Assembly: GCF_006345805.1 (NCBI RefSeq)
Contig: NC_042997.1
Location: forward strand, 182,714,001 to 182,778,000
DNA from: Octopus sinensis
Lineage: Eukaryota
Length of the DNA: 64,000 nucleotides
Direction: 5' to 3'
This document shows, piece after piece, positions 4,737 to 46,200 of this stretch. A program made the position numbers and the translations under genes. Positions within the stretch are counted from its first letter, which is position 1; each line of letters opens with the position of its first letter. The notes under the pieces are model-generated. The model did not search any database and was not told where the DNA came from. It was given only the letters and a program-made list of their open reading frames with translations.

Positions 4737-5219
4737 TTACAATATTGAACAATAAGGAGATGCATATGACGCATATGATGCCATATAGTTCCATCTTCCT
4801 TCAGTCTCAGTTTTCCTTGTTTTCTCAGTTTGTGCATGAATTTCATCTTCCCAAACTTCGTCGTATTCTCTCTCGCTAATCTCACTGTCATCATCATCGC
4901 TGCTCTCCAGACTCCAGTCAGCAGGATAGGCAAGCATCCTCTCACAAGATGAGGAGGTTGAGGTTATCATTGTATTTCTGCTTCGACCGGCACCGCTGCC
5001 ACCACCGCCACTGCCGCCGCCACCACCACTACTGCTGCTGCTGCTACAGAAGCTGGCGCCAAGCTGAGAGGCAGAGCTTGGAGAGGTGTAACTCAGAGCT
5101 TTCATTCTGGAACTGTGGAATTTGTGGAAATGCTTGCCATCTTGACAGTCCATCAGGTATCCAATGATGGGCAGGGGAAGAGGGGATGCCCATGGATTAG
5201 GTTCTGGGATCGCTAGATT
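4737..5219 (-). CDS. Terminal exon 19 (160 aa: Pro-rich start, Ser/Gly linker, acidic patch, ...SPYCSIL*)
   Basis: tttgttttgcag acceptor; 483-nt open frame to TAA (track ORF 4737..5297); ends in CaaX CSIL. Confidence 0.92.
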   Translation of the reverse strand, partial: NLAIPEPNPWASPLPLPIIGYLMDCQDGKHFHKFHSSRMKALSYTSPSSASQLGASFCSSSSSSGGGGGSGGGGSGAGRSRNTMITSTSSSCERMLAYPADWSLESSDDDDSEISEREYDEVWEDEIHAQTEKTRKTETEGRWNYMASYASYASPYCSIL

Positions 5220-5307
5220 CTGCAAAACAAATGAAGTCATAAAACAGTAAATAAATAAATAAATAAATAACAAGGCGGGGTATGAACTCAGAGACATAAC
5301 TAAATAC

Positions 5308-5546
5308 CTATTTCTTTACTACTCACAAGGGGCTAAACACAGAGAGGACAAACAAGGACAGACAAACGGATTAAGTCGATTATACCGACCCCAGTGCGTA
5401 ACTGGTACTTAATTTATCAACCCCGAAAGGATGAAAGGCAAAGTCGGCCTTGGCAGAATTTGAACTCAGAACGTAACGGCAGACGAAATACCGCTGAGCA
5501 TTTCGCCCGGCATGCTAACGATTCTGCCAGCTCGCCGCCTTCTAAA
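5308..5546 (-). mobile_element. Young tRNA-derived SINE (family A; central CTTTCATCCTTTCGGGG..GATAAA..AAGTACCAG domain)
   Basis: tRNA-like head with A/B-box-like motifs; 11-bp TSD TAACTAAATAC at 5297-5307 and 5547-5557; many related copies in the window. Confidence 0.85.
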
Positions 5547-5701
5547 TAACTAAATACTGTCAGCTATTTTAACCGATACTCTACTGAAGCTGTCTAATTT
5601 TTGGTACATAACAATAAATTAAGGGTGACTGATTCAATCCTTACACTTGACTGATACTTATTTTATTAGCATGGCACTGCAGTGGTTTATTTTTGTATTA
5701 A

Positions 5702-5921
5702 CCCTTTCATTACTGTATTTATTTTGAGATGCTCTGTATTTCTTTCAATTACTTTAAATATAACAAAGAATTTAGTAAAATAACTTAGTTATCATTAAAC
5801 TGGTGTTGGGAACATAAATTGTAACTAAGGTTTGGTGGAAGATTTTAATTCAAAACTTATGAAAACAAGACATTTATACTCAGAGTCAGAGCCAGTTTCA
5901 GCCAGGTTGGTAACGAAAGGG
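5702..5921 (+). mobile_element. piggyBac-type MITE (220 bp)
   Basis: TTAA TSDs both sides; TIR CCCTTTC(A/G)TTAC. Confidence 0.8.
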
Positions 5922-5952
5922 TTAAAGAAAAATAAGAAAAATAAAAAGGTAC

Positions 5953-6033
5953 CTGCTTTAATTGGTATTGCAATAGATCAGCCATTGACTTTTGGTTTCT
6001 GCGATCTTTGAAAGACAATGGTGAACGACCATC
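5953..6033 (-). CDS. Exon 18 (DGRSPLSFKDRRNQKSMADLLQYQLKQ)
   Basis: tcttcttttcattcag acceptor, CAG|GTACC donor, 81 nt; continues the repeat (DK|DGRSPL). Confidence 0.92.
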
Positions 6034-6112
6034 CTGAATGAAAAGAAGATATGAACAGTGTATGATAAATGAATGATGGAAAGAATGATAAAAATAATAA
6101 ATAATGGCTTCT

Positions 6113-6270: not shown

Positions 6271-6315
<45 letters not shown>

Positions 6316-8639: not shown

Positions 8640-8675
<36 letters not shown>

Positions 8676-8694: not shown

Positions 8695-8796
8695 CTTATC
8701 AACAGTGAACTCAGAACATCCATAATCAATCAATATATTTGACATTTCATTATCTTCAGGCATTCCGTGTGCATAGTGAAGAGCAGTTCGATAAAA
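8695..8796 (-). CDS. Exon 17 (FYRTALHYAHGMPEDNEMSNILIDYGCSEFTVDK)
   Basis: ttttcccccgccag acceptor, GTATGT donor, 102 nt; ankyrin repeat; inside track ORF 8590..8835. Confidence 0.95.
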
Positions 8797-9450: not shown

Positions 9451-9570
9451 CTGGTCTCTTAAAGAGTCAAGACTTAGCTTATTTTTATAAACAAGGGTGT
9501 GAACTAATGTCCTTACAATTGGGACATAACATCTAAGAACTGCCTTGTGAAGTACAGGTTGACCATCGCC
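9451..9570 (-). CDS. Exon 16 (GDGQPVLHKAVLRCYVPIVRTLVHTLVYKNKLSLDSLRDQ)
   Basis: ctgctttctctag acceptor, GTTAGT donor, 120 nt; ankyrin repeat. Confidence 0.93.
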
Positions 9571-10247: not shown

Positions 10248-10373
10248 CTTGTATCTGGCACCAGCAAGGCAAGGTTCAAATGCAGAAAGTTCTGGGTCAT
10301 TAGTAATTAAGTTGTTAGTTACTTCCTCCACATTTCCTTCAACAACAGCAGTAACAAATAATTTGATTTTCTC
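10248..10373 (-). CDS. Exon 15 (EKIKLFVTAVVEGNVEEVTNNLITNDPELSAFEPCLAGARYK)
   Basis: tttattgcag acceptor, GTAAAC donor, 126 nt; inside track ORF 10185..10379. Confidence 0.92.
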
Positions 10374-11200: not shown

Positions 11201-11516
11201 GTGAGGAGTCATTCTCAGAATATTGGTTTCATTTGGCACAAGGCTAGCAAGTTTGGGAAAGTGGGTTTATTACATCAACCCCAGTGCTTACTTGCTACTT
11301 ATTCTATTGACACTGAAAGGATGAAAGACAAAGTCAACCACGGCAGAATATGAACTCAGAACACAAAGATGGACAAAATTCCACTAAGCTTTTCTGCCTG
11401 GTGTACTAATAATTCTGCCGGCACTGTATTAATTGACACAGAATACTTCTTGTACGTATTTTGTCGACCTTGAAACAGAAAAATTATGGATAATTTTCAA
11501 TATTCAGAAAACTTAC

Positions 11517-11612
11517 CTGATATCTGCTAAAATTTTGAAAGGCTGAGTTATTTGGAGTAGGGGATTTCTGAGAAAGACTAGATGAATCTTCACTTTCTTC
11601 TGAAGGATTGTT
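11517..11612 (-). CDS. Exon 14, Ser-rich linker (NNPSEESEDSSSLSQKSPTPNNSAFQNFSRYQ)
   Basis: tcttttcctccag acceptor, CAG|GTAAGT donor, 96 nt. Confidence 0.85.
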
Positions 11613-13877: not shown

Positions 13878-13970
13878 CTCCAATGGCATCACAAAGTAGC
13901 GGTAGTCATGTAATGCTAACAACTTGAAGTTGGCATCATTTTTACTTTCGAAACACCACCGAAACACAGT
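13878..13970 (-). CDS. Exon 13 (TVFRWCFESKNDANFKLLALHDYRYFVMPLE)
   Basis: ttttatatttttccag acceptor, GTAGGT donor, 93 nt. Confidence 0.88.
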
Positions 13971-15637
13971 CTGGAAAAATATAAAAATAGGATTGTCTGA
14001 AAAAGAGAGAATGCTTTACAAACATCACAAACTGTGGCACTATTTTTAGGTGTCATATTTTGCTTTTGCATCCACTTCTTCTATGTGTCAGGCAAGACTT
14101 CTTGAGGCATTGTTCTATGGCATTTCCTGATGCCAACTTTTACTTGTCTTTACATGCTTTTACTGAGGTTTCAAATATATTATGTGGGAAACAAACAACA
14201 TTGCAGCATCCCAATCAATATTAATGTGAAAACACATGAAAAAACATGCATACATACACATACATATTCTGGACAATTTCCATTTACTGAGTTTCTTTTA
14301 CAATGCAATAGAAGATATTTATCCAACAGGTCACACATAGGGTATGAAATTTTATAGCAAATACACAGCTTAAGGCAATTATTGGATAGTTTTAAGAACA
14401 TCTGATGACTAGTTAAGAGACATAAAATTATAAATCATGGAACAGTAGTTAATTACAAAACTGCAACACAGTATATATATACATATACATATAGAAAAAT
14501 TAAGTTAGAGGTTATGCAACCATCTAAGGGATAAATGTATCCATAGGTTAACAGTAGTTGGTAATTTAAATGGTAAACCGTAGTTTAATATATTCAGATA
14601 AAAAAAGAAATAGAGCAACAATTAACAATTATACAAACATATACACACACACAAAAATAAATCTTGGTGGTGGGAATTATCTGTTCAAGGGAACATGGTA
14701 AAACCACACAAAATGTATTGCTCAAAGAATTACTACTGAATACAAATATGTTTTGTTAAAAAGAGTATAGGCAACCTTATTTGAATCCAGTGTTGTCATG
14801 TTTTAATGAGTCATCTAGAGCTATCTCCCCTGTCACATCATTAATAACCAGGTGGCGCTCTTATCCCGGATCGGAATAAATACTTCATGTACATGAAGTC
14901 TTCGAAAATTCTTACGAGTTGTTGTTGTTCCTCACTGGATTAATTCCTACAGCTATTGAAGGATGACCGAACATTATAGTAAATTAGTGGGCTAAAAGCT
15001 CTCTAAAAGAGTGAGTCCAACAAAAGATGTTTCATTTCATTCTTGTATGAGACAAATGCCAATATTGCTGGACTCACTGGTTTAATTAAACATATATTGG
15101 CTTGTTTCATTTAGCATCTGTTTTCTTATGCTAGCATAGTTCAGAAGCTCTTCTTACTGCCAATTCTTATTTTTATATGATTTTTAAGTAAGGGATTTTT
15201 TTTTTTATCTCAGAAGAATTAGAAAGTGCAGAGATAGCAGATAAATTGTTGACAGGAAATGTCAACAATTATCACTGTAATCATAGCTCAGTGTAGTTTG
15301 TAAACATTTACACACACACACACGTGTGTGCATCTGAGAATGTGTAGTGTCGTGTTTGTGTGTATGCTTCATGCAAATTAATTCCTAATAAATATGTCTC
15401 AGAGTGATACAAGGTTATACAACTGTAGAGAAGAGCTATACTGGATTGAACTGACAATAGTATGTGATTGATACTAATTTTAGTAACTCCTCAAGAATAA
15501 TATGCAAAGTCATACTCAGAAAGATTTGCCCTCAGGTTGTATTTCAGCGCATGTTCTAAGATTACATAAAAAGAAAAATGGAATATATTTATTTAATTTC
15601 AGGACGTAGAAAATATTTCAAAGAAAAATATAATTAC

Positions 15638-15706
15638 CCTATCAATTACTTCAACAACATCTGTAGCGTCACATTCAGCAGCATATTCCCGACTGTTCAG
15701 GTTAAA
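15638..15706 (-). CDS. Exon 12 (FNLNSREYAAECDATDVVEVIDR)
   Basis: tattttctcag acceptor, GTAATT donor, 69 nt. Confidence 0.88.
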
Positions 15707-15827
15707 CTGAGAAAATATAACAATTACTTCAGTTAAAAAACTACAAATGAAAAATAAGTCATTTTGTATTTTCATTAAAAAGTTAGTATAAAATGTTAAC
15801 TTAAAACATCCAGTGACTGAAGAATTA

Positions 15828-16313
15828 CCATAAATCATCAAGTATAGTCCGCCCTTGAGTATAATATGCAGGGGATTTTTAGGGGCTGTACCTCTGAAAA
15901 ACCTAAACCTTGTGTATAATACGCACCCCTTCTCTAACTTAAGTTAAGGAGGTCTATATAACGTCCTCGGTTTGTAAAAATGTATACGGTAATGTCCTTT
16001 ATTATTATTGTATATATAACAAATGTATATATGCAAACGTGTAGCTTTTTTGTGCATTTTGTTTGCAGAAAATAAAGAAATAACAGTAATAACGTTTAGT
16101 AAATGTTGCTAACTGCAAGTTATGGATGATTTAAGTTATTTTCGTGACTGACATCACAAAATGAGTCTGAATAAACATTGCCGGACAGCAAATAGAGACT
16201 TGGACATTGCTTAGAAAATAATTTTCATTTTTAACCTTGTATTTAGTACGCACTAGGGATTTTAACTTTCAAATTTTGGGAAAAAAATGCGGATTATACT
16301 TGAGGATTTATGG
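15828..16313. mobile_element. Tc1/mariner (pogo-like) MITE
   Basis: TA TSDs; TIR approx. CCGTAAATCCTCGAGTATA; three copies in the window. Confidence 0.8.
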
Positions 16314-16319
16314 TAGTTA

Positions 16320-16582
16320 CACAACATACTGGCATGGCATTGGTTACGATGACAAGTGTTCCAGTTGATCTGATCAATGGAATAGCCTGAGCATAAGATT
16401 AACGTGGAATTGGTTGAGCACTCCATAGACATGCGTAACCTTAACGCAATTCTCAGGGAGATTCAGCATGACACAGAATGGGACAAGGCTGGCTCTTTAG
16501 GGCACAATGCACTGCCAGGAATCGAACTCATGAACTTACAATCATGAGCTGAATATCCTAACCACTAAGCCACATGCCTCCA
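16320..16582 (-). mobile_element. tRNA-derived SINE (family D)
   Basis: Minus strand starts TGGAGGCATGTGGCTTAGTGGTTAGG..GAGTTCGATTCC (A/B boxes). Confidence 0.7.
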
Positions 16583-17342
16583 CAGTTACGCAACAAGGAA
16601 CTGGATAAGAGATATGGGTCAGGTATACATGAGTATTTTTCTCAGTCATTCTATGTTCATTCACAAAACTCCTACATACTTCACTAGTCATTCTAAAATC
16701 TGCAGTAAAGACTACACAACACTAAAGAGATCCAAATAGATCAAAACAGGTGGAGTTGTCAACATATTGCCAAAGTCACATTCACTTCCCAATTGCATTC
16801 CTTATTTAATTAAAATTTCAAGTTTTCTCCCCTGTATTTTTCTTTTTGTGATGGAATTTATGATTCTGAAAATTGTTCTCATCCATCAATTGAGATGAGA
16901 ATATATTTGATTATTTTATATAATATATATCAAATATATTTGAATATTTAATCAAATATATTATTTGATTTGGTTTGTTCTATAATGTATGTCAATGCCC
17001 ACTTTACTTTTCAGTTTTCCTGGAGTAGACACTGACAGGTACTTGTTACTACTCATTCATCCATACAGTTTACAACTGCTTAATTTAGGTCTAACAACAA
17101 ACCTAGGACTATAGTCAACTCCTAAATGAAGACACCTGGTTGTAATTTATATTGAAGTAGGAGTATTGCTTATAGTAAAACATCAGATCTCTGAATATCA
17201 CTGCATCCAGTTGCTTTATATCAGAACAATATGCAGTTAAGTTCAGAATATTGTGGTTGTTGTTGCTATTCTTAATTGACAAAAATTACCTTATTCTATA
17301 AATAACCTGGTTTGATTACTTAAGCATAGAAATTTTTCTTAA

Positions 17343-17562
17343 TTCTTTCATTACCAACCCGGCTGAAACCGGCTCTGGCTTTGAATACAAATGTTTTGTT
17401 TTCATAAGGTTTGAATTAAAATCTTCCACCAAACCTTATTCAGAATTTATATTCCTAACACTGGCTGAATGATAACCAAGTTATTTTACTAAATCCTTTG
17501 TTATATTTAAAGTAATTGAAAGGAACACAGAGCATCTCTAAATGAATACAGTAATGAAAGGG
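17343..17562 (-). mobile_element. piggyBac-type MITE, same family, inverted orientation
   Basis: Reverse complement of the 5702 copy; TTAA flanks; left TIR slightly decayed. Confidence 0.8.
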
Positions 17563-17714
17563 TTAAATATAAATTCAATAACAAAGATTATTTTCAGGAT
17601 CTAATTTCCAATTCACAAAGTAGCGTTAATCAAGAAAAGCAGGAAAATAAGGTATGTAGTAGTAAAAGATAATTTTAAAATAAAAAATTATATAAAAAAA
17701 CTCAAATCCTTTAC

Positions 17715-17819
17715 CTTATTTTTAGCAGTAATTAAGTTGGCACAACCTTTTTTAAGAATCACTTCAACAATCTCCTTTGGCACTAGGTAATCAATACAAT
17801 GTAAGATCACATTTTGTCC
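17715..17819 (-). CDS. Exon 11 (GQNVILHCIDYLVPKEIVEVILKKGCANLITAKNK)
   Basis: ttgtttttcag acceptor, GTAAAG donor, 105 nt; ankyrin-like. Confidence 0.92.
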
Positions 17820-18052
17820 CTGAAAAACAAATACATTAATTTATAACATGGACACAAGGTCACATACATTGGGGAGGTTTATAGTCGATTATATCAATAC
17901 TTGTACTTCACCGATATGCATTGTATTGACCTCAAAAGGATGAAAGGCAAAGTGGTATCCACTGGGATTTGAACTCAGATCATAAAGAAGCTATGACCAA
18001 ATACTGTGAGGCATTTTGTTCAATATTTTACTGATTCTGTCAATCCACCACA

Positions 18053-18141
18053 CTCACTCAAGGGCTGCCCTGGGTGACACTCACTCAGGGGCTGCCCTGG
18101 ATGGCACACACTCAAGGGCTGCCCTGGGTGGCACACACTCT
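18053..18141. repeat. 30-bp minisatellite x3 (CACTCAAGGGCTGCCCTGGGTGGCACA-type)
   Basis: Three tandem near-identical units; explains track ORF 18016..18303. Confidence 0.85.
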
Positions 18142-18199
18142 AACTACACCACTGTTGCTTCCACTTTAAATAACAAACACATTCGACAAGATTCTTTCA

Positions 18200-18760: not shown

Positions 18761-18814
18761 AACAAAAACAAAAATTTCCCTATACGAAAATAATGAGATA
18801 TTTGTTCCACTTAC

Positions 18815-18934
18815 ACGATAGAATAGTTTAGACAAATTTTCAGGTCTATTTGGTATAGTTTTTTCAATCAATTCAGGAGATATAGGAGAAGTAGAGCAGT
18901 TCATGAGGACAGCAAAGAGCAGAGGAATATCAAA
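18815..18934 (-). CDS. Exon 10 (FDIPLLFAVLMNCSTSPISPELIEKTIPNRPENLSKLFYR)
   Basis: tttatctttcag acceptor, GTAAGT donor, 120 nt. Confidence 0.9.
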
Positions 18935-24429: not shown

Positions 24430-24522
24430 CCCATTTCGAAAATTCATATTCACTGGTTTTTTGGATTCAATAACTTCACTGACAAGAATTATGTCATCAG
24501 CAAGCACACCATGGGCCAAATC
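24430..24522 (-). CDS. Exon 8 (DLAHGVLADDIILVSEVIESKKPVNMNFRNG)
   Basis: ttttatattttag acceptor, GTAAGA donor, 93 nt. Confidence 0.9.
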
Positions 24523-25567: not shown

Positions 25568-25651
25568 CATAGATGGATTTATTTCACTAACTAAACGATC
25601 CATATTTTCAACACCATGCTCAATAGCAAGTTGTACCAAAGTTTTTCCATT
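25568..25651 (-). CDS. Exon 7 (NGKTLVQLAIEHGVENMDRLVSEINPSM)
   Basis: poly-T...ttacag acceptor, GTATGT donor, 84 nt. Confidence 0.92.
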
Positions 25652-25768: not shown

Positions 25769-25855
25769 CTTCTCTATATCAGTTCTGCACCACTGATTAA
25801 CTAAACGTCGCACACTCATCAAATCATCATTTTCAACAGCATTCCACATCCCAGG
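25769..25855 (-). CDS. Exon 6 (PGMWNAVENDDLMSVRRLVNQWCRTDIEK)
   Basis: tttttctctgtttacag acceptor, GTAGGG donor, 87 nt. Confidence 0.92.
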
Positions 25856-27907: not shown

Positions 27908-27991
27908 CATGTATTTTTCAAATACATTTTTGACATTGTTTTGCAATGTAGATTTTCTTCTTGTGAGTTCATCAAGGACATTGATACCCGC
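27908..27991 (-). CDS. Exon 5 (AGINVLDELTRRKSTLQNNVKNVFEKYM)
   Basis: atattttcag acceptor, weak GTTTGT donor, 84 nt; joins in frame to exon 6 (EKYM|PGMW). Confidence 0.85.
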
Positions 27992-28699: not shown

Positions 28700-28807
28700 C
28701 TGATTAACAGCATACACGTCTGCATTACACCGCAACAAGGCCTCAACAAAAGTGGCATCAATTTCTTTCCCATTTTGCAGGTATGTCAAAAGTGGAATGG
28801 ATCCATC
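28700..28807 (-). CDS. Exon 4 (DGSIPLLTYLQNGKEIDATFVEALLRCNADVYAVNQ)
   Basis: AG acceptor, GTTAGT donor, 108 nt; one ankyrin-like repeat. Confidence 0.9.
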
Positions 28808-30340: not shown

Positions 30341-30463
30341 TTTTGTATTTGGGTGATTGATATTCAGACCTGCATTCCGTAAGAGGTAGACAAGTTTAGT
30401 GGCTTCAGCTACACCACTTGGTTTCTCAACCAATCCATTGATGAGAGTATCAAAAAGGTCATC
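30341..30463 (-). CDS. Exon 3 (DDLFDTLINGLVEKPSGVAEATKLVYLLRNAGLNINHPNTK)
   Basis: tttccttttaattctag acceptor, GTAAGT donor, 123 nt; ends in ankyrin-like GLNINHPN. Confidence 0.9.
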
Positions 30464-33464: not shown

Positions 33465-33548
33465 TTGCTGTTCTGATATCAGCGTTTCTCCATAGAGAAT
33501 ATCCTTGGAATTGTCTGGGTTCAGCTGTCTCACATACTCATACAGTTC
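33465..33548 (-). CDS. Exon 2 (ELYEYVRQLNPDNSKDILYGETLISEQQ)
   Basis: ttttattttag acceptor, GTAAGT donor, 84 nt, open frame. Confidence 0.85.
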
Positions 33549-34213: not shown

Positions 34214-34272
<59 letters not shown>

Positions 34273-34771
34273 CAATTCAATAAAGAAAGATGTTATTCAC
34301 ACCATATAGAAAACATATGCTATAAAAAACCTTATTTTAAAAATCAATAAAGTACAATAAATAGTAAATAGTAGTAAAAATTTGAAACCAATATATATAT
34401 ATATGTATTGGTTTCAAATTTTGGCACAATGCCAGAAAGTTCAGGGAAAGGGATATGTTGATTACATTGATCCTACTGCTCGATTGTTACTTATTTTATC
34501 AACCCCAAAAGGATGAAATGTGAAGTCAACCATGGTAGAATGTGAACTGAAAACATCATGATAAATGAAATGCCACCAAGCATTTTGCCAGGTATGGTAA
34601 AAATTCTGCCAGCTCACCATCTTATACATATTTATTAATTACAATATTAGCATCTCATAGAAAGATAGATAAAGACACAAACACATATGCACAGCAAATG
34701 TCACCTGTTAGCATTGCTTGTGATTCTCAAATAAATTATGAAGAGAAATGACAATGGTTTAGGATCCTTAA

Positions 34772-35599: not shown

Positions 35600-38500
35600 T
35601 CTCTCTGTGCCTCACTCTGTTTCTCTCACTTGGCCTCACTCTGTCTGTCTGTCTCTCTTTCGATTACCACTTGCTTCGCCAAGATTTCCTCCACCAACCC
35701 CGCCCCCATGCTATATAAACTAGAGCACACACTCAGATTCCCCTACTCAATTTTTAATACCTCCACCAAAAGAATACGTATTCAGAAGATGCACTCATCT
35801 AAATTTTCTAGTTCACAGTATGCCCGCCCTCCCACCCCTCCACCTGTACCGGAAGTTCCTATCCCCTGTCATCCTGTGATTGTCTCCCATGAACACTTCT
35901 AAAGGCTTTATGCCATCCCCACCCCTACTTAGGGTTTATCTCCTATGTAAGGTAGTGATCATATAGTGCATAAATATGATGGTGTAGTGTATGCAGGTTG
36001 AATTGAAGGCTATTGTTTGTTTTTGAATTCTTCCAAATGCGAGCTTTCTTTTCAGGTACATGATGCTGTTGTCCCCCGTCCCAGGGTCTCATGAGCCCAC
36101 ACCTCCCACATCCTCAGGGTTGGCACTCTCAACGTCGGCACACTGAAAGGTAGGTCTGGTGAGATTGTTGAGATGCTTGAATGGAGATGTGTCGATTTGT
36201 GCTGCCTCTAAGAAGTAAGGTGGAGAGGAGGTTTGCCTAGGTTCTTCACAGGTAAAGAACATAGGTACAAGATTTTCTGGGCAGGGAACACTGACGGGGT
36301 TGGGGGTGTGGGTTTACGTCTTGCAGAGAAATGGGTTGATAAAGTAATTAAGGTAGTCAGTGTATGTGACAGAATACTTAAGATTAGATTAGTGCTTCAT
36401 CATGGGTTAGCAACCATTATCTCAGCCTATGCCCCTCAGCCGGGGTTACCTGATAGACAGAAAGACCGATTTTATGACTACATCATTGATGAATGACAGG
36501 GACCTTCTCTTTGTGGCTGGTGACTTTAATGGACATGTTGGACAATATACAGGGGGCTTCCATGGCGTACATGGAGGCTGCGGTTTTGGTTCCCGCAATA
36601 AGGAGGGAACCAGGCTGCTGGAGTTCTGTGGTGCAAATGATCTTAGGATTTGCAATACTAACTTCAGGAAACCTGCAAGTCACCTAGTCACCCACTGTTC
36701 TGGCAGACACACTAGCCAAATTGACTACATCCTTGCCAGAAAAAGGGAAAACCAGCTGCTTATAAATGCCAAAACCTTCCCAGGTGAAGAATGTATCCCA
36801 CAACATAGACTAGTAGTTAACAACTTCAGGATCAGGGCTAAATGGATGCCCAGAAGACGATCAGCATGAAGAAGAAGGGTCTGGAAGCTTAAAGATCCTG
36901 TGAATGGACAGAGATTTAGAGAAGCCTTTGATGAAATAGAAGGGGATATAGCTTCACACAATGTGGAAGACAACAGGAGGTTTTTATGAGACAACCTGCT
37001 GAGGGCCACTGACCAGATCTGTGGATGGTGCAAAGTCCTCTCTCGACCCAAAATAACATGGTGGTGGAACAATGTTGATGACAGGGCTATTAGAGTAAAG
37101 AAACTGGCTTGGAAGGACTGGAAGAACAGTGATAGCAGGGAATTGTATCAGACTGCCAGGAGGGAAGCTAGGAGACAGGTTTATTTAGCCAGAGGGGAAG
37201 CAGATAACAAAAAATTTGCCAATGTTCTGTACCGTGAGGACCAGAGTCTTGAGGTACTTCGTGTTGCAAGACAGTGTGTGAGAAAGAATCATGATATTGT
37301 AGGAGAGAAATATGTCCACATGGATGATGGTTCTCTTGCACTAAATGAGGCTGCAAAGAGAGAGGTTTGGAGACACCACTCTGAAAGTTTGCTCAATAAA
37401 GAGAATGAATGGAAGAAAGAGAGTTTGCCAAATGTCAACCCAACAAAGGGACCAGCTATCTGAGTTGACAGTACCTTGGTAGATAAAGCAATTAAGAGTA
37501 TGAAGACAGGGAAAGGCCCCAGCCCATCAGGAATCACTGCAGAGATGCTCAAAATATCTGGCAGTGTTGGCTATAGCCTAGTCACCTGTATAGTTAACCA
37601 GGTGATACACGAAGAGTCATACCCAATGACTGGTGTAGCAGCACCATAGTCAACTGCTACAAAGGTAAAAGTGATGCTTTAGATAGAAATAATTACAGAA
37701 GTATCAAGGGAGAAAAACTAGAAGTAGTTGATAGCTTCCGTTACCTGGGTGACCAAGTCAGTAGCAGGGGTGGGTGCACTGAAAGTGTAGCTGCTAGAAT
37801 AAGAATAGCCTGGGAAAAGTTCAGAGAGCTCTTACCTCTGCTGGTGACAAAGGGCCTCTTGCTCAGAGTAAAAGGTAGACTGTATTACGCAAGTGTATGA
37901 ACAGCCACACTACATGGCAGTGAAACATGAGCCATGACTGCTGAGGACATGCATAAGCTTGCAAGGAATGAAACCAGTATGCTCCACTGGATGTGTAATG
38001 CCTGTGTGCATACTCGACAGAAAAAAGTTGGACCTAAGAAGCATCAAATGTGGTGTGCAAGAGAGATGACTGCACTAGTATGGACATGTGGCGAGAATGG
38101 ATGAGGATAGCTATGTGAAAATGTACCACACCCTAGCGGTTGAGGGAACCTGTGGAAGAGGTAGACCCAGGAAGACCTGGGATGAGGTGGTGAAGCATGA
38201 CCTTCAAACATTAGGCTTCACCAAGGCAATGACTAGTGACTGAGACCTTTGGAAATATGCTGTGCTTGAGAAAACCCGGCAAGCCAAGTGAGATCATAAC
38301 TCATGTCCTATGCCAGGGGTATAACCAGCCCACTTATGCGTACCTTTCCTTCATTGGACACTAAACTCTACTTGCGAAGATCTGTTGAAATCAAATTCGA
38401 TGACTGGCATCTGTGCAAGTGGAGCGCTAAGAGCACCATCCAAGCGTGATCGTTGCCAGAGCAGCTGACTGGCTTCCATGCCGGTGGCACGTAAAAAGCA

Positions 38501-38830
38501 CCATTCGAGCGTGATCATTACCAGTGACGCCTTACTGGCACGTGATAAAAATATTTGACGAAGGTCGTTGCCAGTGCCGCTAGATTGGCTCCTGTACAGG
38601 TGGCATGTAAAAAACACCATGGAGAGTGACCATTGCCAGTACCACCTGACTGGCACGTAAAAGCACCCACTACACTCTCGGAGTGGTTGGCGTCAGGAAG
38701 GGCATCCAGCTGTAGAAACTCTGCCAGATCAAGACTGGAGCCTGGTGCAGCCATCTGGTTCGCCAATCCTCAGTCAAATTGTCCAACCCATACCAGCATG
38801 AAAGCGGATGTTAAACAATGATGATGATAT
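35600..38830 (+). mobile_element. RTE-clade LINE, decayed, RT core deleted
   Basis: APE endonuclease (LRVGTLNVGTLKG, ISAYAPQ, VAGDFNGHVG, SQIDYIL, QHRLVV), KAPGPSG-like and NYRSIK motifs, then GEKLEVVDSFRYLG, GRGRPRKTW, family B 3'UTR and (GAT)n tail; many stops and frameshifts; 5' boundary approximate. Confidence 0.88.
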
Positions 38831-38896
38831 ATATATATATATATACACACATATATACATACACATATATACATATATATACACACATATATTTAT

Positions 38897-38957
<61 letters not shown>

Positions 38958-38959
38958 CA

Positions 38960-39600
38960 TCATCATCATCATCGTTTAATGTCCCCTTTCCATGCTGGCA
39001 TGAGTTGGACAATTTGACTGAGGGCTGGCAAGCAAGATGGCTGCACCAGGCTCCAATCTGATCTGGCAGAGTTTCTACAGCTGGATACCCTTCCTAATGC
39101 CAACCACTCCGAGAGTGTAGTGGGTGCTTTTATGTGCTACCAGCATGAGGGCTAGTCAGGCAGTGCTGGTGACAGCAATGCTCAAATGGTGTTTTTTATG
39201 TGCCACCTGCACAGGAGCCAGTCCAACAGCACTAGCAACGACCTCGCTTGAATGCTTTTCATGTGCCTGCGTCACAAGTGCCAGTAAGGTGATGCTAGTA
39301 ACAATCACACTCGAATAGTGCTTTTTATGTGCCACCGACATGGGAGCCAGTCAGCATCTCTGGCAACGATCACGCTTGGATGGTGCTTTTAACATTCCAG
39401 TGGCACAGGTGCCAGTCATGCGGTGCTGTCATCGACCATGTCAGTGAATTTGATTTTAATTGTGATTTCACTTGCCTCAACAGGTCTTCACAAGCAAAGT
39501 TTAGTGTCCAACGAAAGAAAGATATGCATAAGTAGGCATGGGTTATGGTATCACTTGGCTTGCTGGGTCTTCTCAAGCACAGCATATTTCCAAATGATTT
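38960..39600 (-). mobile_element. Family B (RTE 3'-tail) copy, tail-to-tail with the preceding RTE
   Basis: Same block; separated from the + strand RTE tail by a (TA)n/(CATA)n microsatellite. Confidence 0.8.
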
Positions 39601-39689
39601 ATAATAATATATATGTGTGTGTGTGCATGTGTGTGCACGCACACCCATGCATATAGATATATATATGCATATGTATATCCATAACATTG

Positions 39690-40340
39690 TCTTGGTGAGG
39701 CCTAATGTTCGACGGTTGTGCTTCACCACCTCATCCCAGGTCTTCCTGGGTCTACCGCTTCCACAGATTCCCTCAACTGCTAGGGTGTGACACTTTTTCA
39801 CACAGCTGTCCTCATCCATTCGCACCACATGACCATATGAGCGCAGTCATCTCTCTTGCACACCACATCTGATGCTTCTTAGGTCCAATTTTTCTCTCAA
39901 GGTACTTACACTCTGTCGAGTATGCACATTGACATTAATCATCCAGCAGAGCATACTAGCTTCATTCCTTGCAAGCTTATGCATGTTCTCAACAGTCACA
40001 GCCCATGTTTCACTGCCATGTAGCATGGCTGTTCACACACATGCGTCATACAGTCTACCTTTTACTCTGAGCGAAAGGCCCTTTGTCACCAGCAGAGGTA
40101 AGAGCTCTCTGAACTTTGTCCGGGCTATTCTTATTCTAGCAGCTACACTTTCAGAGCATCCATCCCCGCACCTAGGTAATAGAAGCTGTCAACTATTTCT
40201 AGTTTTTCTCCATGGAATGTGTCAGAAGTTGTTCTCTGCACATTTCCAGTGTTTATTGTTTCTGAGCATCTGTCACATACAAAAATTATCTTCCCAGTTA
40301 GCCTTCCTTTGATATTGCTGCACCTTTTATGTGTCCAAAC
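39690..40340 (-). mobile_element. RTE LINE 3' fragment
   Basis: Track ORFs: WTHKRCSNIKGRL..CDRC..GEKLEIVDSFYYLG and GSGRPRKTWDEVV. Confidence 0.85.
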
Positions 40341-41269
40341 ATACACACACATACATATACAAACATGTTTATAAAAACATAGTAAAACTAATGGAAATGA
40401 AAATAATATACATATATATATATACACACACATTGTGAAAGTAATTGAAATTGAAACCATATAACAGTGAAAGTATATAACATTACAATAGAAGTGTTAT
40501 CGTTTCACTTTTGACATGTAATACCAAAACAGTGTAAGAGATAAGAGATTGTTCCGGGCTTGCTTTAGGCAAGAAGTTGAAAATTTCTTCAGCCCATGAT
40601 ACTACATTAACCCTAAGTAAGGCATGTGTAAAATTTAAATGAAATCGGTCAGGTAAATCTCGAGTTTTAGTGATGCACACATACAGACACAAACACACAC
40701 ATTCTTAGTTTTATATTTATAGATGGTATTTAATATACTTGTAGTTTGTCTGCGTTATTCATATACATGTCGCTGACAACTTTGAGTCATTTGCCTTAGC
40801 TTATTGTAACTTCATTTATGCAAATTACCTAAGCTATAAATGTCTTACATTTTTTTTGTGTATGTCTATTCCCTTGGTTGCTGAAGATACAGTGGGACTA
40901 TTGTCATGCTGATGATGCCTATTGTACAAGAAACACATGTCCATGACTGTCTTATTTCTAGATAAGCCTGTGCTTTTCTTAAATGGCATATCAGAGAGAA
41001 TGCTTGATACTTCAGATGATTTCCCTTTCTCATATGGTAATTGTGACCCCCTCCTATAGGAGCAGAGAAAATTTCAATAAATAAAGAATATATATTTTAT
41101 GGTATTTGATATACCTGTATTTGTCTATGTTGTTCATATACCTGCCACTTGCCATGCTGAGGTATTTCTCTTAGCTCAACCCCCTTCAGGTTGATGGCCC
41201 TGCTAGATTTGTAGAAAATGAGTGGGTAGACACTCCATATGATGTACCTGGTGTAAGCTATAGACACAT

Positions 41270-42385
41270 AAAAGGTGCAGCAATATCAAAGGAAGGCTAA
41301 CCAGGAAAATAGTTTTTGTGTGTAGCAGATGCACTGGGGCAATAAACACTGAAGATGTACAGAAAACAGATTCCATCACTTGCTAGTGGGAGAAACTAGA
41401 AGTAGTTAATGGCTTCCGCTACCTAGTCTGTAGTGGGGGAAGTTGCTCTGAGAGTGTAATGACTAGAGTAAGAATAGCCTGGGCAAAGTTCAGGGAGCTC
41501 CTACCTCTGCTGGCAATTAAGAGCCTCTTGCTCAGGGTGAAAGGCAGACTGTATGATGCATGTGTGCAGTGAAACATGGGCTATGAATGCTGAGGACATG
41601 TATAGGCTTGAAAGAAATGATGCTAAATGTCAGTGTGCATACATGATAGAGAGTAAGCACCCTGAGAGAAAAGTTGGGCATAAAAAGCATCAAATGTGGT
41701 GTGCAAGAAAGGCAACTGCGCTGGTATGGCCATATGTATCATATGAAGACAGCTGTGTGAGGAAGTGCCACTCCCTAACTGTAGAAGGAACCTGTGGAAG
41801 AGGTAGACCCAGGAAGACATAGGTTAAGGTGGGGAAGCATGACCTTTGAACATTGGGCTTCACAGAGGCAATGACAGGAGACTGGGACCTTTGGAGATAT
41901 GCTGTGATTGAGAAGACCCAGCAATTAAAGTAAGATCGCAGCTACGCATATCCAACCTTGATGCATTGGGCGATATCATATGCTTGAGAAGACTTGTTGA
42001 GTCACGTAATACATCAACATCAAAATAAAAATTAAATGGAAATTGTAGTTGTGATACCCGTGCCGGTGGCACATAAAAAGCACCATCCGAATGTGGCTGA
42101 TATCAGCGAAGCCTTGACTGGCTTCCGTGCCGGTGGTACGTAAAAAGCACCAACCGATCGTGGCCGTTGCCAGCCTCCCCTGGCACCTGTGCCGGTGGCA
42201 CATAAAAAGCACCCACTACACTCACGGAGTGGTTGGCATTAGGAAGGGCATCCAGCTGTAGAACCACTGCCAGATCAGACTGGAGCCTGGTACAGCCTCC
42301 TGGTTTCCCAGACCCCGGTCAAACCGTCCAACCCATGCTAGCATGGAAAACGCACATTAAACGATAATGATGATGATGATGATAT
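41270..42385 (+). mobile_element. RTE LINE 3' fragment with family B tail
   Basis: GEKLEVVNGFRYL, EGTCGRGRPRKT, tail ending (GAT)n. Confidence 0.8.
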
Positions 42386-42437
42386 ATATATATATAAATC
42401 ATCATCATCATCAGTTGTTCATGCTGGTATGGGTTGG

Positions 42438-42616
42438 GATAAAGATAGTTATGGCTGGTCTATGAGGTTACCCAGGGTTTCATGTCTATAAAGCACTTAA
42501 CTTTACATTGTCTCTTCAGACAGTCATTAGGGTCTGAGAGAGATGCTGTAAAGCCAAGCGCTTTATGGACATGAAACCATGGGTAACTCCATAGAGCACC
42601 CATAACCATCTTTATC
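42438..42616. repeat. Imperfect inverted repeat, ~85-bp arms, 10-nt loop
   Basis: GATAAAGATAGTTATGG...CTTCAGAC / GTCTGAGAG...CATAACCATCTTTATC. Confidence 0.8.
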
Positions 42617-42832
42617 TAATTACTCTACTGTTTTATCTAATTACTCTACTGTTCTGTAACTTAGAATGTGCTTCTCTTTTGGATTTATGATTTACTGATA
42701 TGTGTGTATGTGTGCATCTGTATATCCATAACAAAACAAGAAATTGGAAAATTTATTGCTATTATTTATTCACTATTGCACATGTTTCATTTGCTAATAA
42801 GAATTATTATAGAGTTTTACATGTTAGATAAG

Positions 42833-43080
42833 TGGAGGCGTGTGGCTTAGTGGTTAGGGTGTCAGCATCATGATCGTAAGATTGTGGTTTCGATTCCTGG
42901 ACTGGGCAAAGCGTTGTTCTTGAGCAAAACACTTCATTTGACATTACTCCAGTCCACTCAGCTGGCAAAAATGAGCAACGCTGTGATGGACTGGCGTCCC
43001 ATCCAGCTGGGGAACACACATGCCATTGAAACCGGGCCCATGAGCTTGGCTAGGCTTTAAAAGGGCGCATTTATTATTTT
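42833..43080 (+). mobile_element. tRNA-derived SINE
   Basis: TGGAGGCGTGTGGCTTAGTGGTTAGGG..GGTTTCGATTCC head, TTCTTGAGCAAAACACTT core-like block. Confidence 0.75.
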
Positions 43081-43699
43081 TTTTACATGTTAGATAGACA
43101 TGTAAGGAACTTCCTATTAGAAATTCTTCAGACAAAGAAATTAAATAATATAAATTTTATAGTTAGCTGAAGTATTTATATTTAGAAATCAGGAGCCATA
43201 TAGACAGTTATGAGTGAGGAAGGAAGAGCAAATTTGATATTACAGAAGAGAAAAGAGAGGGAGTCACACACATTTATACATGTAATAGGGATGTATACAA
43301 AACCATACGCATGCAGGCATGGCTGTGTGGTAAGAAGATTGCTTCCCAACCCCATGGTTCTGGGTTCAGTCCCACTGTATGGCACCTTTGCAAATGTCTT
43401 TTATTATACCCTCGGGCTGCAAGATGTCACGCAGTAGGACTGAACTCAAAACCACGTGATTGAGTAGCAAACCTCTTACTACATAATCACACCTGCACCT
43501 ATATAATATAAAACACACACACATACACACCCGCCCCCATACATTAACGTTAATCTTGAACACATTAAAATATTTTTTAAGTGACTGAGTACTATGTATC
43601 TCCTGCACTAGTCTTACGGCTGTGTATGTGTGGCTAGAGAAGGAGACATACAGACAGATTATATCTCCTGTAATAGAAACCATAAATCACTTCAGTTTT

Positions 43700-44710
43700 T
43701 ATATTTTCATTTGTTTTATAATCGAACTTATTGTAATAATCATTTATATTTCTTAATAAGACACATGTATCTTCATATTGATATTACATCACGTACATGA
43801 CATTTTCACTTTCGGAAGCCGAGCTATTGTGATATTAGGAAAATGTCAACCTTTATTACTTTTGATATCGGAATATTCATTAGTGGATGGAAATTATTTT
43901 CAATGTAAAAGATTTAGTAAAATCTCAACTTGCTTTAGATGAGCAATTTGCGAGCGATATTTGGTTATTATTCATTTTATCAGAAATTACGGGGTTCATT
44001 ATCGTGACTTTGATGCTGTTTGGAATTAATTGCAATATTGGTGTGTTGAAATTAACCCTAAGTTCTCCGCGTACCTTCATCATTATTCGTAATACTTCGA
44101 TATTCTATCCCCTCACTCCATTTTTAGAAAAAAATAATTTATAACCAATTTAAATTTTTGGTATTATTTTAAAATCTAAACGGCAGCGAGAAATAGAAAA
44201 TACTGAGAGAAAAAAAAAATTAAAATCATAGGTGGAAATTAAAAAAAAAACAAGCAATAGGAATATAAACCATCGTTGATAATCAACTGTCATTTATGAA
44301 CCAACAGGATCAATTTCTGTTTATTAATATTAATTAAAATATAAAGATATATATATATTAAAGATGTATAAATAGCTAATTCATAATTTCGTAATGAAAA
44401 GGGACATTTTCGTTTTCTTTTTTTTTCTTCTTCAAACAATCTTTGATCTGGTTGAGAAAAATTTTAGAATGCTATCAATTTAAAAGACTACATTAAGATT
44501 CTTAACCATTTTATTATTATGAAGCAAGCGACACGGACAGCTGTATTCGTCTTAATTTTCTAGCGGTAGGAAAGAGAAAGTACGCTGCCTCTGTATACAA
44601 TACTAAATTATTAGCAGGTGTAGGAGTAACGCCCAATCTATGAAAATCGAAATCACCTGTATACGTTACAATGGATGAATGGTACGAGAATTATTTTAAC
44701 AGACTGCTTT

Positions 44711-44748
<38 letters not shown>

Positions 44749-46200
44749 AACGTTGTGCCATTTGTGTAAATATATATATATATACGGTTATAAATACACG
44801 CTAAGAGAAAGATTGCTTCATCATACTAACCTCCATTCTATCAACAGAATATTTTAGCAGACATAATCAGATGTTTGTTGTTTTCTTTCTTTCACACCCT
44901 CTTCTTTTCACTTTACATTTGCTTCTCGATGGCTCTCCATTTAGACAAGCACTCACGCATACCGTTCTTACAAAGTTAGCTCCCTTGGTATTTCCGTATC
45001 ACAACAGCTTGTTGACATATGTACATGTTCGTGTATACATACATACCTAAATATGTGTGTGTATGTATGTGTACATACATACCTAAATATGTGTGTGTGT
45101 ATATGTGTGTATAGTTGTAGGCGTGTGACTGTGTGTGTGTTGGGATATGCTCTTTAGAATTTTTTTTTTTCGTTAATATTAACTAATTTTAATTTATATT
45201 AATTGATATACGTATCCAAACATTAAAATCTGAAAGATCAAAATAATAATTATGTGCTGACTAAAGGCGTAAACAAATCGTGCATCGTCTGCTGAATAAA
45301 CGTCAAACCGACAAGGGTGCCTCTGTTGTTATGGTAAGGGGAACCATTATAGTTCCGAGGTCGAATGCAAATGAATATGAATATATTGGGGCGCATAATT
45401 TCAGTGAAAAATAAAGAAATAATCTCTACTGAGAAAAATAACCTTGTTTTAAAAATTATACAAATTCATGTGTATGTAACTCATATTAAATTACTTGACG
45501 TCTGAACTGTTTATTTTTATCCATTTTTTTTTCCCGCATGAATTTTTTTTTTTTTTTTAGGAATAATTCATCAACGGTGGGTTTCGATTTGGAATGTCGC
45601 TGAAATTTCCTCCGAGAACGAGGGATCCCCCTGTCTTGTCCTACATAGTCGCTCGACCAACTAGAAATAGTGGCCAATTGTCTATAGAATCTACTCAGCC
45701 GACTTTATAACGGGAGGACACATTGGATAGCAGCTGATGTTCGATAGAGAAATGATGGAATGTTGACGATAGGAAATCGCTTGCTCATAGATTTGCTTGA
45801 TCAGGGCAAGCATGAGGAATTAATAACAAGTGAACGATGTACTAACCATTACACACACTCACTCACAAACACACACAGACAAGATAGATAGATAGATAGA
45901 TAGATAGCGAGAGAGAGAGAGAGAGAGAGAGAGTATACTGAATATATGTAGAAGAGTTTATTGGAAGCTAGTATTTCACTTCATTGTCACTCATTCCCAT
46001 TCCATTTTCTTTTTCCTCGGATTATATTTTATGGGTTTAAATGTATAAATGAAATTAGATTCATTAAAAAAAAAAACAAGAAAAACGTCAAAACGTGCGG
46101 GAGAATATATTCGTTCAGAGTTAAAGCGTTTCTCCGGAGCTACACTGAAATGGCCATTGTTTGACCGATGAAACTTTAGGGTCCTCGGTAGGTCTTAATT
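43700..46200 (-). promoter_or_regulatory. Putative promoter / first-exon region (CpG-retaining)
   Basis: CG dinucleotides become frequent from ~43.7 kb, around putative exon 1; TSS not locatable. Confidence 0.45.
45495..45539 (-). CDS. Ankyrin-CaaX gene, putative coding exon 1 (MREKKMDKNKQFRRQ; alternative ATG at 45524)
   Basis: ATG at 45539 or 45524, donor CAA|GTAATT at 45494, phase 0; reads naturally into exon 2 (KQFRRQ|ELYEYVRQL); lies in the CpG-normal region. Least certain exon. Confidence 0.6.

What the first reader, a model, noticed from the sequence alone, without database searches (positions are those of the whole stretch)
4737..45539. Hidden 19-exon gene for an unnamed ankyrin-repeat protein with a prenylation signal
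Seen: 19 small exons splice into one ~739-aa frame with two ankyrin-like blocks (exons 3-12 and 15-18) separated by a Ser-rich linker (exon 14), a distinctive Y-M-P-G-M-W-N-A-V..VRRLVNQWCR motif, and a low-complexity tail ending CSIL. Established: ankyrin repeats are protein-interaction scaffolds. Inference: a membrane-tethered adaptor of a family I cannot name, with no catalytic domain visible. This is the best candidate here for an undescribed system.
Basis: partly seen in the sequence, partly recalled or inferred. Interest (0 to 1): 0.72.

Follow-up and report, generated by a model that had tools for sequence, protein, structure and literature searches.

The report
Octopus ankyrin-repeat gene with lipid-anchor signal
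The window holds a real 19-exon octopus gene for a long ankyrin-repeat scaffold with a floppy tail that ends in a conserved lipid-attachment (CaaX) signal; it belongs to an unstudied family found in many invertebrates, and is an ordinary gene rather than a new kind of system.

Summary
The gene is real and lies on the minus strand. It has 19 coding exons and 18 GT-AG introns, all phase 0.

The start is the ATGGAG mini-exon at 44836-44831, which gives 726 aa rather than 739.

The model rests on four lines of evidence:
- Full-length transcripts from other cephalopods align end to end with the spliced CDS.
- An 88%-identical single-gene protein is annotated in Argonauta hians.
- The CDS is 97.9% identical to O. 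bimaculoides, with no indels or stops; surrounding non-coding DNA is about 92% identical.
- A horseshoe crab orthologue has a near-identical 19-exon, all-phase-0 layout.

The protein is about 16 ankyrin-type helix pairs, one per exon, in two blocks joined by a Ser-rich linker. A roughly 150-residue disordered tail follows and ends in CSIL. Cys at position -4 is present in 41 of 46 relatives.

The family occurs in molluscs, chelicerates, crustaceans, a tardigrade, a rotifer and a flatworm. Every member is "uncharacterized" or carries an arbitrary automatic name. Pfam, PDB sequence search and Foldseek find only generic ankyrin repeats.

The best reading is a prenyl-anchored scaffold; its binding partner is unknown. 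Interest is modest.

The parts
44831..44836 (-). Coding exon 1: ATGGAG (Met-Glu), donor gttagt.
   Evidence: identical, with its flanks, to the annotated start of O. bimaculoides LOC106872778; cephalopod transcripts start ATGGAGGAACTC with upstream in-frame stops.
45495..45539 (-). Not supported as coding.
   Evidence: the ORF is destroyed in O. bimaculoides (ATG lost, 4-bp insertion, stop). No orthologue has this N-terminus.
33465..33548 (-). Exon 2 (84 nt), ELYEYVRQLNPD..., first helix pair
30341..30463 (-). Exon 3 (123 nt)
28700..28807 (-). Exon 4 (108 nt)
27908..27991 (-). Exon 5 (84 nt)
25769..25855 (-). Exon 6 (87 nt): family signature PGMWNAVENDDLMSVRRLVNQWCRTDIEK
   Evidence: motif conserved in molluscs and arthropods
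25568..25651 (-). Exon 7 (84 nt)
24430..24522 (-). Exon 8 (93 nt); last exon of the O. bimaculoides model LOC106872778
21830..21946 (-). Exon 9 (117 nt): best canonical ankyrin repeat, GDRGATPLYYAL...
   Evidence: (Ank 227-254)
18815..18934 (-). Exon 10 (120 nt)
17715..17819 (-). Exon 11 (105 nt)
15638..15706 (-). Exon 12 (69 nt)
13878..13970 (-). Exon 13 (93 nt); end of the first repeat block
11517..11612 (-). Exon 14 (96 nt): Ser-rich, poorly conserved linker
   Evidence: low pLDDT in the orthologue model
10248..10373 (-). Exon 15 (126 nt); start of the second repeat block
9451..9570 (-). Exon 16 (120 nt), GDGQPVLHKAVLR...
8695..8796 (-). Exon 17 (102 nt), FYRTALHYAHGM...
5953..6033 (-). Exon 18 (81 nt), DGRSPLSFKDRR...; last helix pair
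4737..5219 (-). Exon 19 (483 nt including the stop): EPNPW motif, then a low-complexity, acidic, disordered tail ending in the CaaX box CSIL

Best explanation
Window 4737-44836 (minus strand) is a single, intact, selectively maintained octopus gene of 19 coding exons.

**The product (726 aa).**
- It is an ankyrin-type alpha-solenoid of about 16 helix-pair repeats, with one exon per repeat.
- The repeats form two blocks joined by a short Ser-rich linker.
- A conserved EPNPW motif follows the last repeat, then about 150 disordered, acidic, low-complexity residues, then the C-terminal CaaX box CSIL.

**Proposed mechanism (inferred).**
- The CaaX cysteine is prenylated in the cytosol. With X = Leu, the prenyl group should be geranylgeranyl, added by GGTase-I.
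- The protein is then processed at the ER by -aaX cleavage and carboxymethylation.
- The lipid holds the C-terminus on the cytoplasmic face of a membrane.
- The long flexible tail lets the rigid ankyrin solenoid act as a membrane-tethered docking platform for one or more unknown protein partners.
- It has no catalytic activity of its own.

**The family.** The gene belongs to an old protostome family found in molluscs, chelicerates, malacostracan crustaceans, a tardigrade, a rotifer and a flatworm. No member of this family has been studied.

**Shown versus inferred.**
- Shown: gene structure, ankyrin fold, disordered tail, conservation of the CaaX box, taxonomic range, and absence of other domains.
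- Inferred: actual prenylation, which membrane, and the scaffold role.
For: **Gene model.**
- 19 exons with all introns GT-AG and phase 0.
- The spliced CDS (1-2181) aligns end to end with a cephalopod transcript contig, L004 115-2277. The protein is 72% identical to P0010 over 1-726.
- A second transcript, L003, spans exons 4-19.
- It is 88% identical to the single-gene Argonauta hians protein.
- Against O. bimaculoides, all 19 exons are intact with splice sites kept. There are 46 nt and 13 aa differences in 2181 nt (97.9%), against about 92% identity in non-coding DNA.
- Exon layout is conserved. The Tachypleus orthologue has 19 all-phase-0 exons of near-identical sizes; Gigantopelta has 20.

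**Fold.**
- Pfam finds only Ank families.
- The AlphaFold2 model of P0010 has pLDDT 82.6 and pTM 0.78. Helix pairs cover 1-380 and 405-565, and residues 585-716 are disordered.
- PDB sequence search and Foldseek find only generic ankyrin solenoids.

**CaaX.** Cys at -4 is present in 41 of 46 family sequences from at least six phyla, although the preceding tail is unalignable and varies from about 50 to 220 residues. The five exceptions are four that end early, inside or soon after the repeat region, and one with a different C-terminus.

**Family.** About 35 end-to-end relatives were found before generic ankyrin giants take over the hit list. Their names are 'uncharacterized' or mutually contradictory automatic labels.
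Against: - No RNA-seq from the window's own species was available, so the junctions are supported by orthologous transcripts, not by reads from this genome.
- Prenylation has not been demonstrated for any family member.
- There is no polybasic stretch or nearby second cysteine next to CSIL in the octopus protein, so the target membrane is uncertain. By the usual rule (my own knowledge) it would be endomembranes.
- X varies across the family (L, V, M, Q, S, T), so the lipid type would differ between lineages.
- No binding partner can be predicted from sequence.
- A related mollusc and annelid clade (P0128-like) has the same solenoid but no CaaX box. The fold can therefore work without a lipid anchor.
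Confidence: 0.75

Rival explanations
1. The locus is really two adjacent genes, as annotated in O. bimaculoides: LOC106872778 (exons 1-8) and LOC106880455 (exons 14-19), with the middle exons non-functional.
For: The NCBI annotation of O. bimaculoides has exactly these two models. In that assembly exons 9-13 lie on the opposite strand.
Against: - In the window all 19 exons are collinear on one strand.
- P0001 ends in intron read-through. The first exon of P0002 maps to the opposite strand of intron 8 in the window, so both models look like annotation artefacts of the inverted segment.
- Exons 9-13 are intact and 98-100% identical between the two species.
- Transcripts from other cephalopods, the Argonauta gene, and orthologues from other phyla are all single and collinear.
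Confidence: 0.03
2. The protein is a soluble ankyrin scaffold and the C-terminal CxxX is not used as a prenylation site.
For: No experiment exists for this family. A paralogous clade lacks the motif. X is variable, and some tetrapeptides (CVVT, CAIS, CSLS) are weak-looking CaaX boxes.
Against: Cys sits exactly at -4 in 41 of 46 sequences, at the end of otherwise unconserved tails, and a2 is nearly always I, L, V or M. That pattern is hard to explain without selection on the CaaX box.
Confidence: 0.12
3. It is a membrane-targeted regulatory subunit of protein phosphatase 1, of the MYPT3/TIMAP (PPP1R16A/B) type. Those are the known animal proteins that combine ankyrin repeats with a CaaX box.
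For: The overall logic is the same: ankyrin repeats plus a C-terminal CaaX box. This comparison rests on my own knowledge of PPP1R16A/B.
Against: - There is no RVxF-type motif in the octopus protein, and none is conserved in the family.
- It has about 16 repeats rather than about 5.
- No PPP1R16-named protein appears among the named hits.
- The ankyrin repeats start at residue 3, leaving no N-terminal PP1-binding arm.
Confidence: 0.03
4. It is a latrotoxin-like toxin or a PP6 / tankyrase / ankyrin-2 homologue, as some automatic database names for its orthologues say.
For: Source names such as 'Alpha-latrotoxin-Lh1a', 'ankyrin-2', and 'PP6 regulatory ankyrin repeat subunit A-like'. Generic ankyrin hits to such proteins in PDB.
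Against: - The names contradict each other between close orthologues.
- Similarity is confined to ankyrin repeats, with Foldseek TM-score at most 0.26.
- There is no other domain, and no room for an N-terminal toxin domain because the repeats start at residue 3.
- A CaaX-tailed protein is cytosolic, not secreted.
Confidence: 0.01

Closest known systems
Uncharacterised protostome orthologues, for example Argonauta hians 'AlphaAlpha-latrotoxin-Lh1a, partial' (P0191), Gigantopelta aegis LOC121388424 (P0011), Tachypleus tridentatus LOC143236459 (P0020), and Amblyomma americanum LOC144113914 (P0007)
   Same: - End-to-end collinear homology: 88%, 45%, 33% and about 29% identity respectively.
- The same signature motifs: PGxWxAV..VRxLxNxWC, GDGQPxLHxAVL, RTALHYA, and EPxPW.
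- The same variable disordered tail and a C-terminal CaaX box.
- The same one-exon-per-repeat, all-phase-0 gene structure.
   Different: Only the tail sequence and length, and the X residue of the CaaX box. X is L in cephalopods, ticks and horseshoe crabs, Q in gastropods, and M in crustaceans.
O. bimaculoides LOC106872778 and LOC106880455
   Same: They are the two halves of the same gene. CDS identity is 97.9%.
   Different: The gene is annotated as two genes with the middle missing, because exons 9-13 are inverted in that assembly.
PPP1R16A/MYPT3 and PPP1R16B/TIMAP (ankyrin repeats plus CaaX; membrane-targeted PP1 regulators). Comparison from my own knowledge.
   Same: The architecture logic: an ankyrin scaffold held at a membrane by a C-terminal prenyl group.
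   Different: No RVxF motif, about three times as many repeats, and no detectable specific sequence relationship.
Long ankyrin solenoids such as the ankyrin-R/B membrane-binding domain
   Same: The fold class. These are the best Foldseek and PDB hits.
   Different: - TM-scores are low (at most 0.26).
- There are no ZU5, UPA or death domains.
- Membrane attachment would be through lipid rather than through bound membrane proteins.
CaaX-less paralogue clade of molluscs and annelids (P0128, P0071, P0149; given automatic names such as ANKRD53, PP6 subunit A, RF_0381, MIB1)
   Same: The same solenoid, with recognisable WC..D, xRxxLHYA and DKDG motifs. It matches the family profile as a single stretch at E about 1e-44.
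   Different: It has no CaaX box and only about 22% identity. The search found no link to vertebrate ANKRD53.

Membership tests
Ankyrin-repeat proteins (Pfam clan Ank) | Significant match to the Ank / Ank_2 profiles | tested here: met
   Ank_2 scores 63.8 bits (cut-off 27.3) and Ank 34.3 bits (cut-off 21.1).
Ankyrin-repeat proteins (Pfam clan Ank) | Stacked helix-turn-helix repeats forming a solenoid | tested here: met
   The AlphaFold2 model of the 72%-identical orthologue shows about 16 helix pairs with pLDDT above 90. The Foldseek top hits are all ankyrin solenoids.
CaaX prenylation substrates | Cys at the fourth position from the C-terminus with an aliphatic a2 residue | tested here: met
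   CSIL followed by the stop codon, at 4751-4737.
CaaX prenylation substrates | The motif is conserved in orthologues despite a divergent tail | tested here: met
   Present in 41 of 46 sequences. Of the five exceptions, four end early and one has a different C-terminus.
CaaX prenylation substrates | Actual covalent attachment of farnesyl or geranylgeranyl | not testable with these tools
   This needs metabolic labelling or mass spectrometry.
Protostome CaaX-ankyrin family (unnamed; defined here by profile A3) | End-to-end collinear match, including the signature PGxWxAV..VRxLxNxWC | tested here: met
Protostome CaaX-ankyrin family (unnamed; defined here by profile A3) | Shared exon-intron structure: about 19 exons, all phase 0, one repeat per exon | tested here: met
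   Octopus compared with Tachypleus and Gigantopelta.
MYPT3/TIMAP (PPP1R16) PP1 regulators | An RVxF PP1c-docking motif N-terminal to the repeats | tested here: not met
   The regex [RK][RK]?[VI]{P}[FW] finds nothing in the octopus protein and nothing positionally conserved in 25 relatives.
MYPT3/TIMAP (PPP1R16) PP1 regulators | Specific sequence homology to PPP1R16 | not tested
   No direct comparison was run. No PPP1R16-named protein appears among the named hits.
Latrotoxins (an automatic name given to some orthologues) | A large N-terminal non-ankyrin domain ahead of the repeats, in a protein of about 1,200-1,400 aa | tested here: not met
   The protein is 726 aa, the repeats begin at residue 3, and Pfam finds no non-Ank domain.
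Vertebrate ANKRD53 (an automatic name given to one paralogue) | Recoverable homology beyond generic ankyrin repeats | tested here: inconclusive
   A profile search with the paralogue clade returned molluscs and annelids, then generic ankyrin proteins. No vertebrate ANKRD53 appeared among the 120 listed hits. The search method depends on shared short exact words, so a distant link could be missed.

The most novel reading that the evidence does not exclude
This would be a protostome-wide family of lipid-anchored, roughly 16-repeat ankyrin scaffolds. It has a fixed one-exon-per-repeat architecture and no member in insects, nematodes or vertebrates. That absence would explain why it has never been studied. 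It would define a previously unrecognised membrane-recruitment module with its own conserved client or clients.
Probability: 0.5. Interest if true: 0.4.

Novelty: new member of a known kind. Interest (0 to 1): 0.3.

Why it matters
**For annotation.** The window gives a clean, collinear gene model that repairs a split annotation in O. bimaculoides. It also shows that the 'alpha-latrotoxin', 'ankyrin-2' and 'PP6 subunit' labels on orthologues are ankyrin-repeat noise.

**For biology.** This is a conserved invertebrate family that combines a long ankyrin solenoid with a strictly conserved CaaX box. Its 18 phase-0 intron positions are the same in a cephalopod and a horseshoe crab, which makes it a tidy example of repeat-per-exon architecture. 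It is also a candidate membrane scaffold in ticks, mites, molluscs and crustaceans.

**Limits.** It is one uncharacterised gene among many in non-model genomes. It does not open or settle a long-standing question.

Tried and rejected
- **Canonical ankyrin motif regexes on six frames** found only one repeat. The repeats are too degenerate, so I switched to homology.
- **Looking for ATGGARGTR upstream** found nothing. Relaxing the donor found ATGGAG|gttagt at 44836.
- **Handing in the spliced protein.** I used orthologue alignments instead for the profile search, and did not pursue the look-up by other means.
- **PDB sequence search and Foldseek** gave only generic ankyrin hits and no specific relative.
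- **Literature.** Locus tags of the orthologues occur in no paper. A search on ankyrin plus CaaX gave only unrelated systems.
- **The 'ANKRD53' label on a paralogue** was followed up. No link to the vertebrate protein was found.
- **RVxF search** for a MYPT-like mechanism was negative.
- **Rfam and tRNA scans** of the whole window were empty.

Full report
**1. Is the observation in the sequence?**

The window is AT-rich (32-45% GC) and full of microsatellites and retroelement debris, as expected for a cephalopod genome. PGMWNAV..VRRLVNQWCR is at 25855-25784, and CSIL plus the stop codon is at 4751-4737.

A search with a rough concatenation of plausible minus-strand ORF pieces returned two O. 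bimaculoides 'uncharacterized' proteins. P0001 (238 aa) covers the N-terminal part and P0002 (351 aa) covers the C-terminal part. It also returned gastropod, tick and transcript-derived relatives.

Mapping these onto the window by tblastn and reading the boundaries gave 19 coding exons. Every intron is GT..AG with a pyrimidine tract, and every intron is in phase 0. The frame is open for 726 codons.

**2. Exon 1**

- In O. bimaculoides the first ATG is gone, and a 4-bp insertion turns the second ATG into ATG GGA TAA.
- The sequence ATGGAG|gttagt at 44836-44831, 700 bp downstream, is identical with its flanks to the start of the annotated O. bimaculoides gene.
- Full-length transcript contigs from another cephalopod (L004, L005) begin ATGGAGGAACTC... 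(MEELY...) with in-frame stops upstream.
- Orthologues from other phyla also start ME.. directly at the first repeat.

The start is therefore 44836, and the gene span is 4737-44836.

**3. Is it one real gene?**

Four independent lines of evidence say yes.

(a) Transcripts.
- The spliced 2181-nt CDS aligns from first to last base with the Logan transcript contig L004 (115-2277) at 71.5% nt identity. The protein is 72% identical to P0010 over 1-726.
- A second contig, L003, spans exons 4-19.
- These cross every junction, including 8/9 and 13/14, which the O. bimaculoides annotation lacks.

(b) A single 723-aa gene product is annotated in Argonauta hians. It is 88% identical over residues 2-726.

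(c) Selection.
- All 19 exons have intact counterparts in O. bimaculoides with no indels or stops, and all AG/GT sites are kept.
- There are 46 nucleotide differences but only 13 amino-acid differences in 2181 nt (97.9% identity), against about 92% in surrounding non-coding DNA.

(d) Gene structure.
- The horseshoe crab orthologue (P0020, L006) also has 19 coding exons, all in phase 0.
- Its exon sizes are 33/90/141/99/99/87/84/96/117/123/105/69/99/60/126/114/102/84/360. The octopus sizes are 6/84/123/108/84/87/84/93/117/120/105/69/93/96/126/120/102/81/483.
- The gastropod Gigantopelta has the same layout with one extra intron.

**4. Why it looked 'hidden'**

In the O. bimaculoides chromosome assembly, exons 9-13 lie on the opposite strand, upstream of exons 14-19. 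The spurious first exon of P0002 maps to the plus strand of intron 8 in the window, at 22822-22884. This implies an inverted segment with breakpoints in introns 8 and 13.

P0001 ends in read-through of intron 8. The annotation therefore split the gene and dropped its middle. The inverted exons are still intact and 98-100% identical, so a scaffolding error is more likely than a real disruption. I could not test this.

**5. What the protein is**

Pfam finds only ankyrin families (Ank_2 at 63.8 bits) in the octopus protein and in four orthologues.

AlphaFold2 on the cephalopod orthologue P0010, with a 35-sequence family alignment, gave pLDDT 82.6 and pTM 0.78. The model shows:
- helix pairs over residues 1-380 and 405-565, with pLDDT mostly above 90;
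- a weak linker at 381-404, which corresponds to the Ser-rich exon 14;
- a disordered region at 585-716.

Overlaying the exon boundaries shows one helix pair per exon for exons 2-13 and 15-18. The introns fall in the inter-repeat loops just before the G-x-T-P-L-H-type position.

PDB sequence search and Foldseek return only generic solenoids: ankyrin-1/2, DARPin fusions and tankyrase ARCs, with TM-score at most 0.26.

**6. The CaaX box**

Of 46 family sequences collected, 41 have Cys at -4, and a2 is almost always I, L, V or M. Examples are CSIL, CAIL, CIIL, CVIQ, CCIM and CNIL. Four of the five exceptions end early, inside or soon after the repeat region, and look like truncated gene models. 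The fifth (Mizuhopecten, P0188) has a different C-terminus.

The tail between the conserved EPxPW motif and the CaaX box cannot be aligned and varies from about 50 to 220 residues. The terminal tetrapeptide is therefore under its own selection.

With X = L, the cephalopod, tick and horseshoe-crab proteins would be GGTase-I substrates. Gastropod proteins (X = Q) would be farnesylated. This follows from the established CaaX rule and is inference here.

**7. The family and its range**

An exhaustive profile search found about 35 end-to-end, single-stretch relatives before generic ankyrin giants take over the list.

Named members come from these groups:
- cephalopods, gastropods, bivalves and a chiton;
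- horseshoe crabs, ticks, Varroa mites, spiders, scorpions and a sea spider;
- mantis shrimp, crab and shrimp;
- a tardigrade, a rotifer and the flatworm Macrostomum.

No insect, nematode, cnidarian or deuterostome appeared among them. This is not proof of absence.

All source names are 'uncharacterized' or 'hypothetical', or are arbitrary labels: ankyrin-2-like, alpha-latrotoxin-Lh1a, PP6 ankyrin subunit A-like, RF_0381. The locus tags appear in no paper.

A more distant mollusc and annelid clade keeps the solenoid but lacks the CaaX box. One member is auto-named ANKRD53, but a profile search from that clade found no vertebrate ANKRD53.

**8. Mechanism**

The best-supported reading is a prenyl-anchored scaffold. 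A rigid solenoid of about 560 residues is tethered by a flexible, acidic leash of about 150 residues to the cytoplasmic leaflet, where it recruits unknown partners.

The nearest functional analogues I know are MYPT3 and TIMAP. The family has no conserved RVxF motif and no detectable specific homology to them, so it may work like them but is not one of them.

The octopus tail has no polybasic stretch or second cysteine next to the CaaX box. By the usual two-signal rule (my own knowledge) this predicts endomembranes rather than the plasma membrane.

**9. Verdict**

This is a new, well-supported member of an already-predicted but unstudied ankyrin/CaaX family. Interest is modest (0.3). The most useful products are:
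- the corrected gene model;
- the explanation of the split O. bimaculoides annotation;
- the conserved CaaX box and repeat-per-exon structure.

Noticed in passing
L002 2132-9116 (O. bimaculoides CM046601.1, about 172.81-172.82 Mb), compared with window 13878-21946: In the O. bimaculoides assembly exons 9-13 are inverted relative to exons 1-8 and 14-19. The breakpoints fall in introns 8 and 13. The exons are intact, so this is probably a scaffolding error, but a real inversion is not excluded.
   Followed up: partly
L002 1-9062 (minus strand of the locus): A 411-aa gene model with Pkinase and PH_3 hits (PDPK1-like) starts inside the inverted exon 9 and runs in the same sense as exons 9-13. It may be a chimeric annotation caused by the same rearrangement. 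No kinase exon was seen between exons 8 and 14 in the window.
   Followed up: no
window 51974-55961 (+): A decayed non-LTR retrotransposon. It has a Myb/SANT-like ORF1, an AP-endonuclease domain (Exo_endo_phos_2) and a reverse transcriptase (RVT_1, 100 bits), all broken by frameshifts. It explains the GC-rich block at 52-56 kb.
   Followed up: partly
window 36200-40500 (intron 1, both strands): Fragments of similar LINE elements (an endonuclease piece at 36411-36866 on the plus strand, and C-terminal RT-like pieces at 39373-40496 on the minus strand) and 67-115-bp tandem repeats at 38450-38658 and 42056-42213. These account for the 45% GC block inside the 11.3-kb first intron.
   Followed up: partly
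window, many sites, for example 5420-5563, 11291-11383, 28531-28656, 29941-30033, 31436-31598, 34465-34638: A short interspersed repeat recurs in several introns in both orientations. In translation it reads ...FAFHPFGVDK(I/L)ST.... It is probably an octopus SINE. A second repeat, which reads GAFYVPPA.. in translation, also recurs at 38.3-38.7 kb, 42.0-42.3 kb, 10.7-11.1 kb and 19.5-19.9 kb.
   Followed up: no
all 18 introns of the gene; L006 and L007: Every intron is phase 0 and falls between helix pairs. The positions are shared with a horseshoe crab and a gastropod. The one-exon-per-repeat layout therefore predates the split between molluscs and arthropods.
   Followed up: yes
C-terminal tails of gastropod orthologues (P0003, P0005, P0011, P0185): Gastropod tails carry an acidic dileucine-like motif (E/D-x-x-D-L-L) about 10-15 residues before the CaaX box. 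The octopus tail instead has an acidic Ser/Asp/Glu cluster (SSDDDDSEISEREYDEVWEDE). These may be sorting signals. This was not tested.
   Followed up: no
L003 about 778-785: The Logan transcript contig has a 1-nt frameshift in an A-run at the exon 11/12 junction region. This is why gene calling split it into 260-aa and 365-aa ORFs. It is most likely an assembly error.
   Followed up: partly
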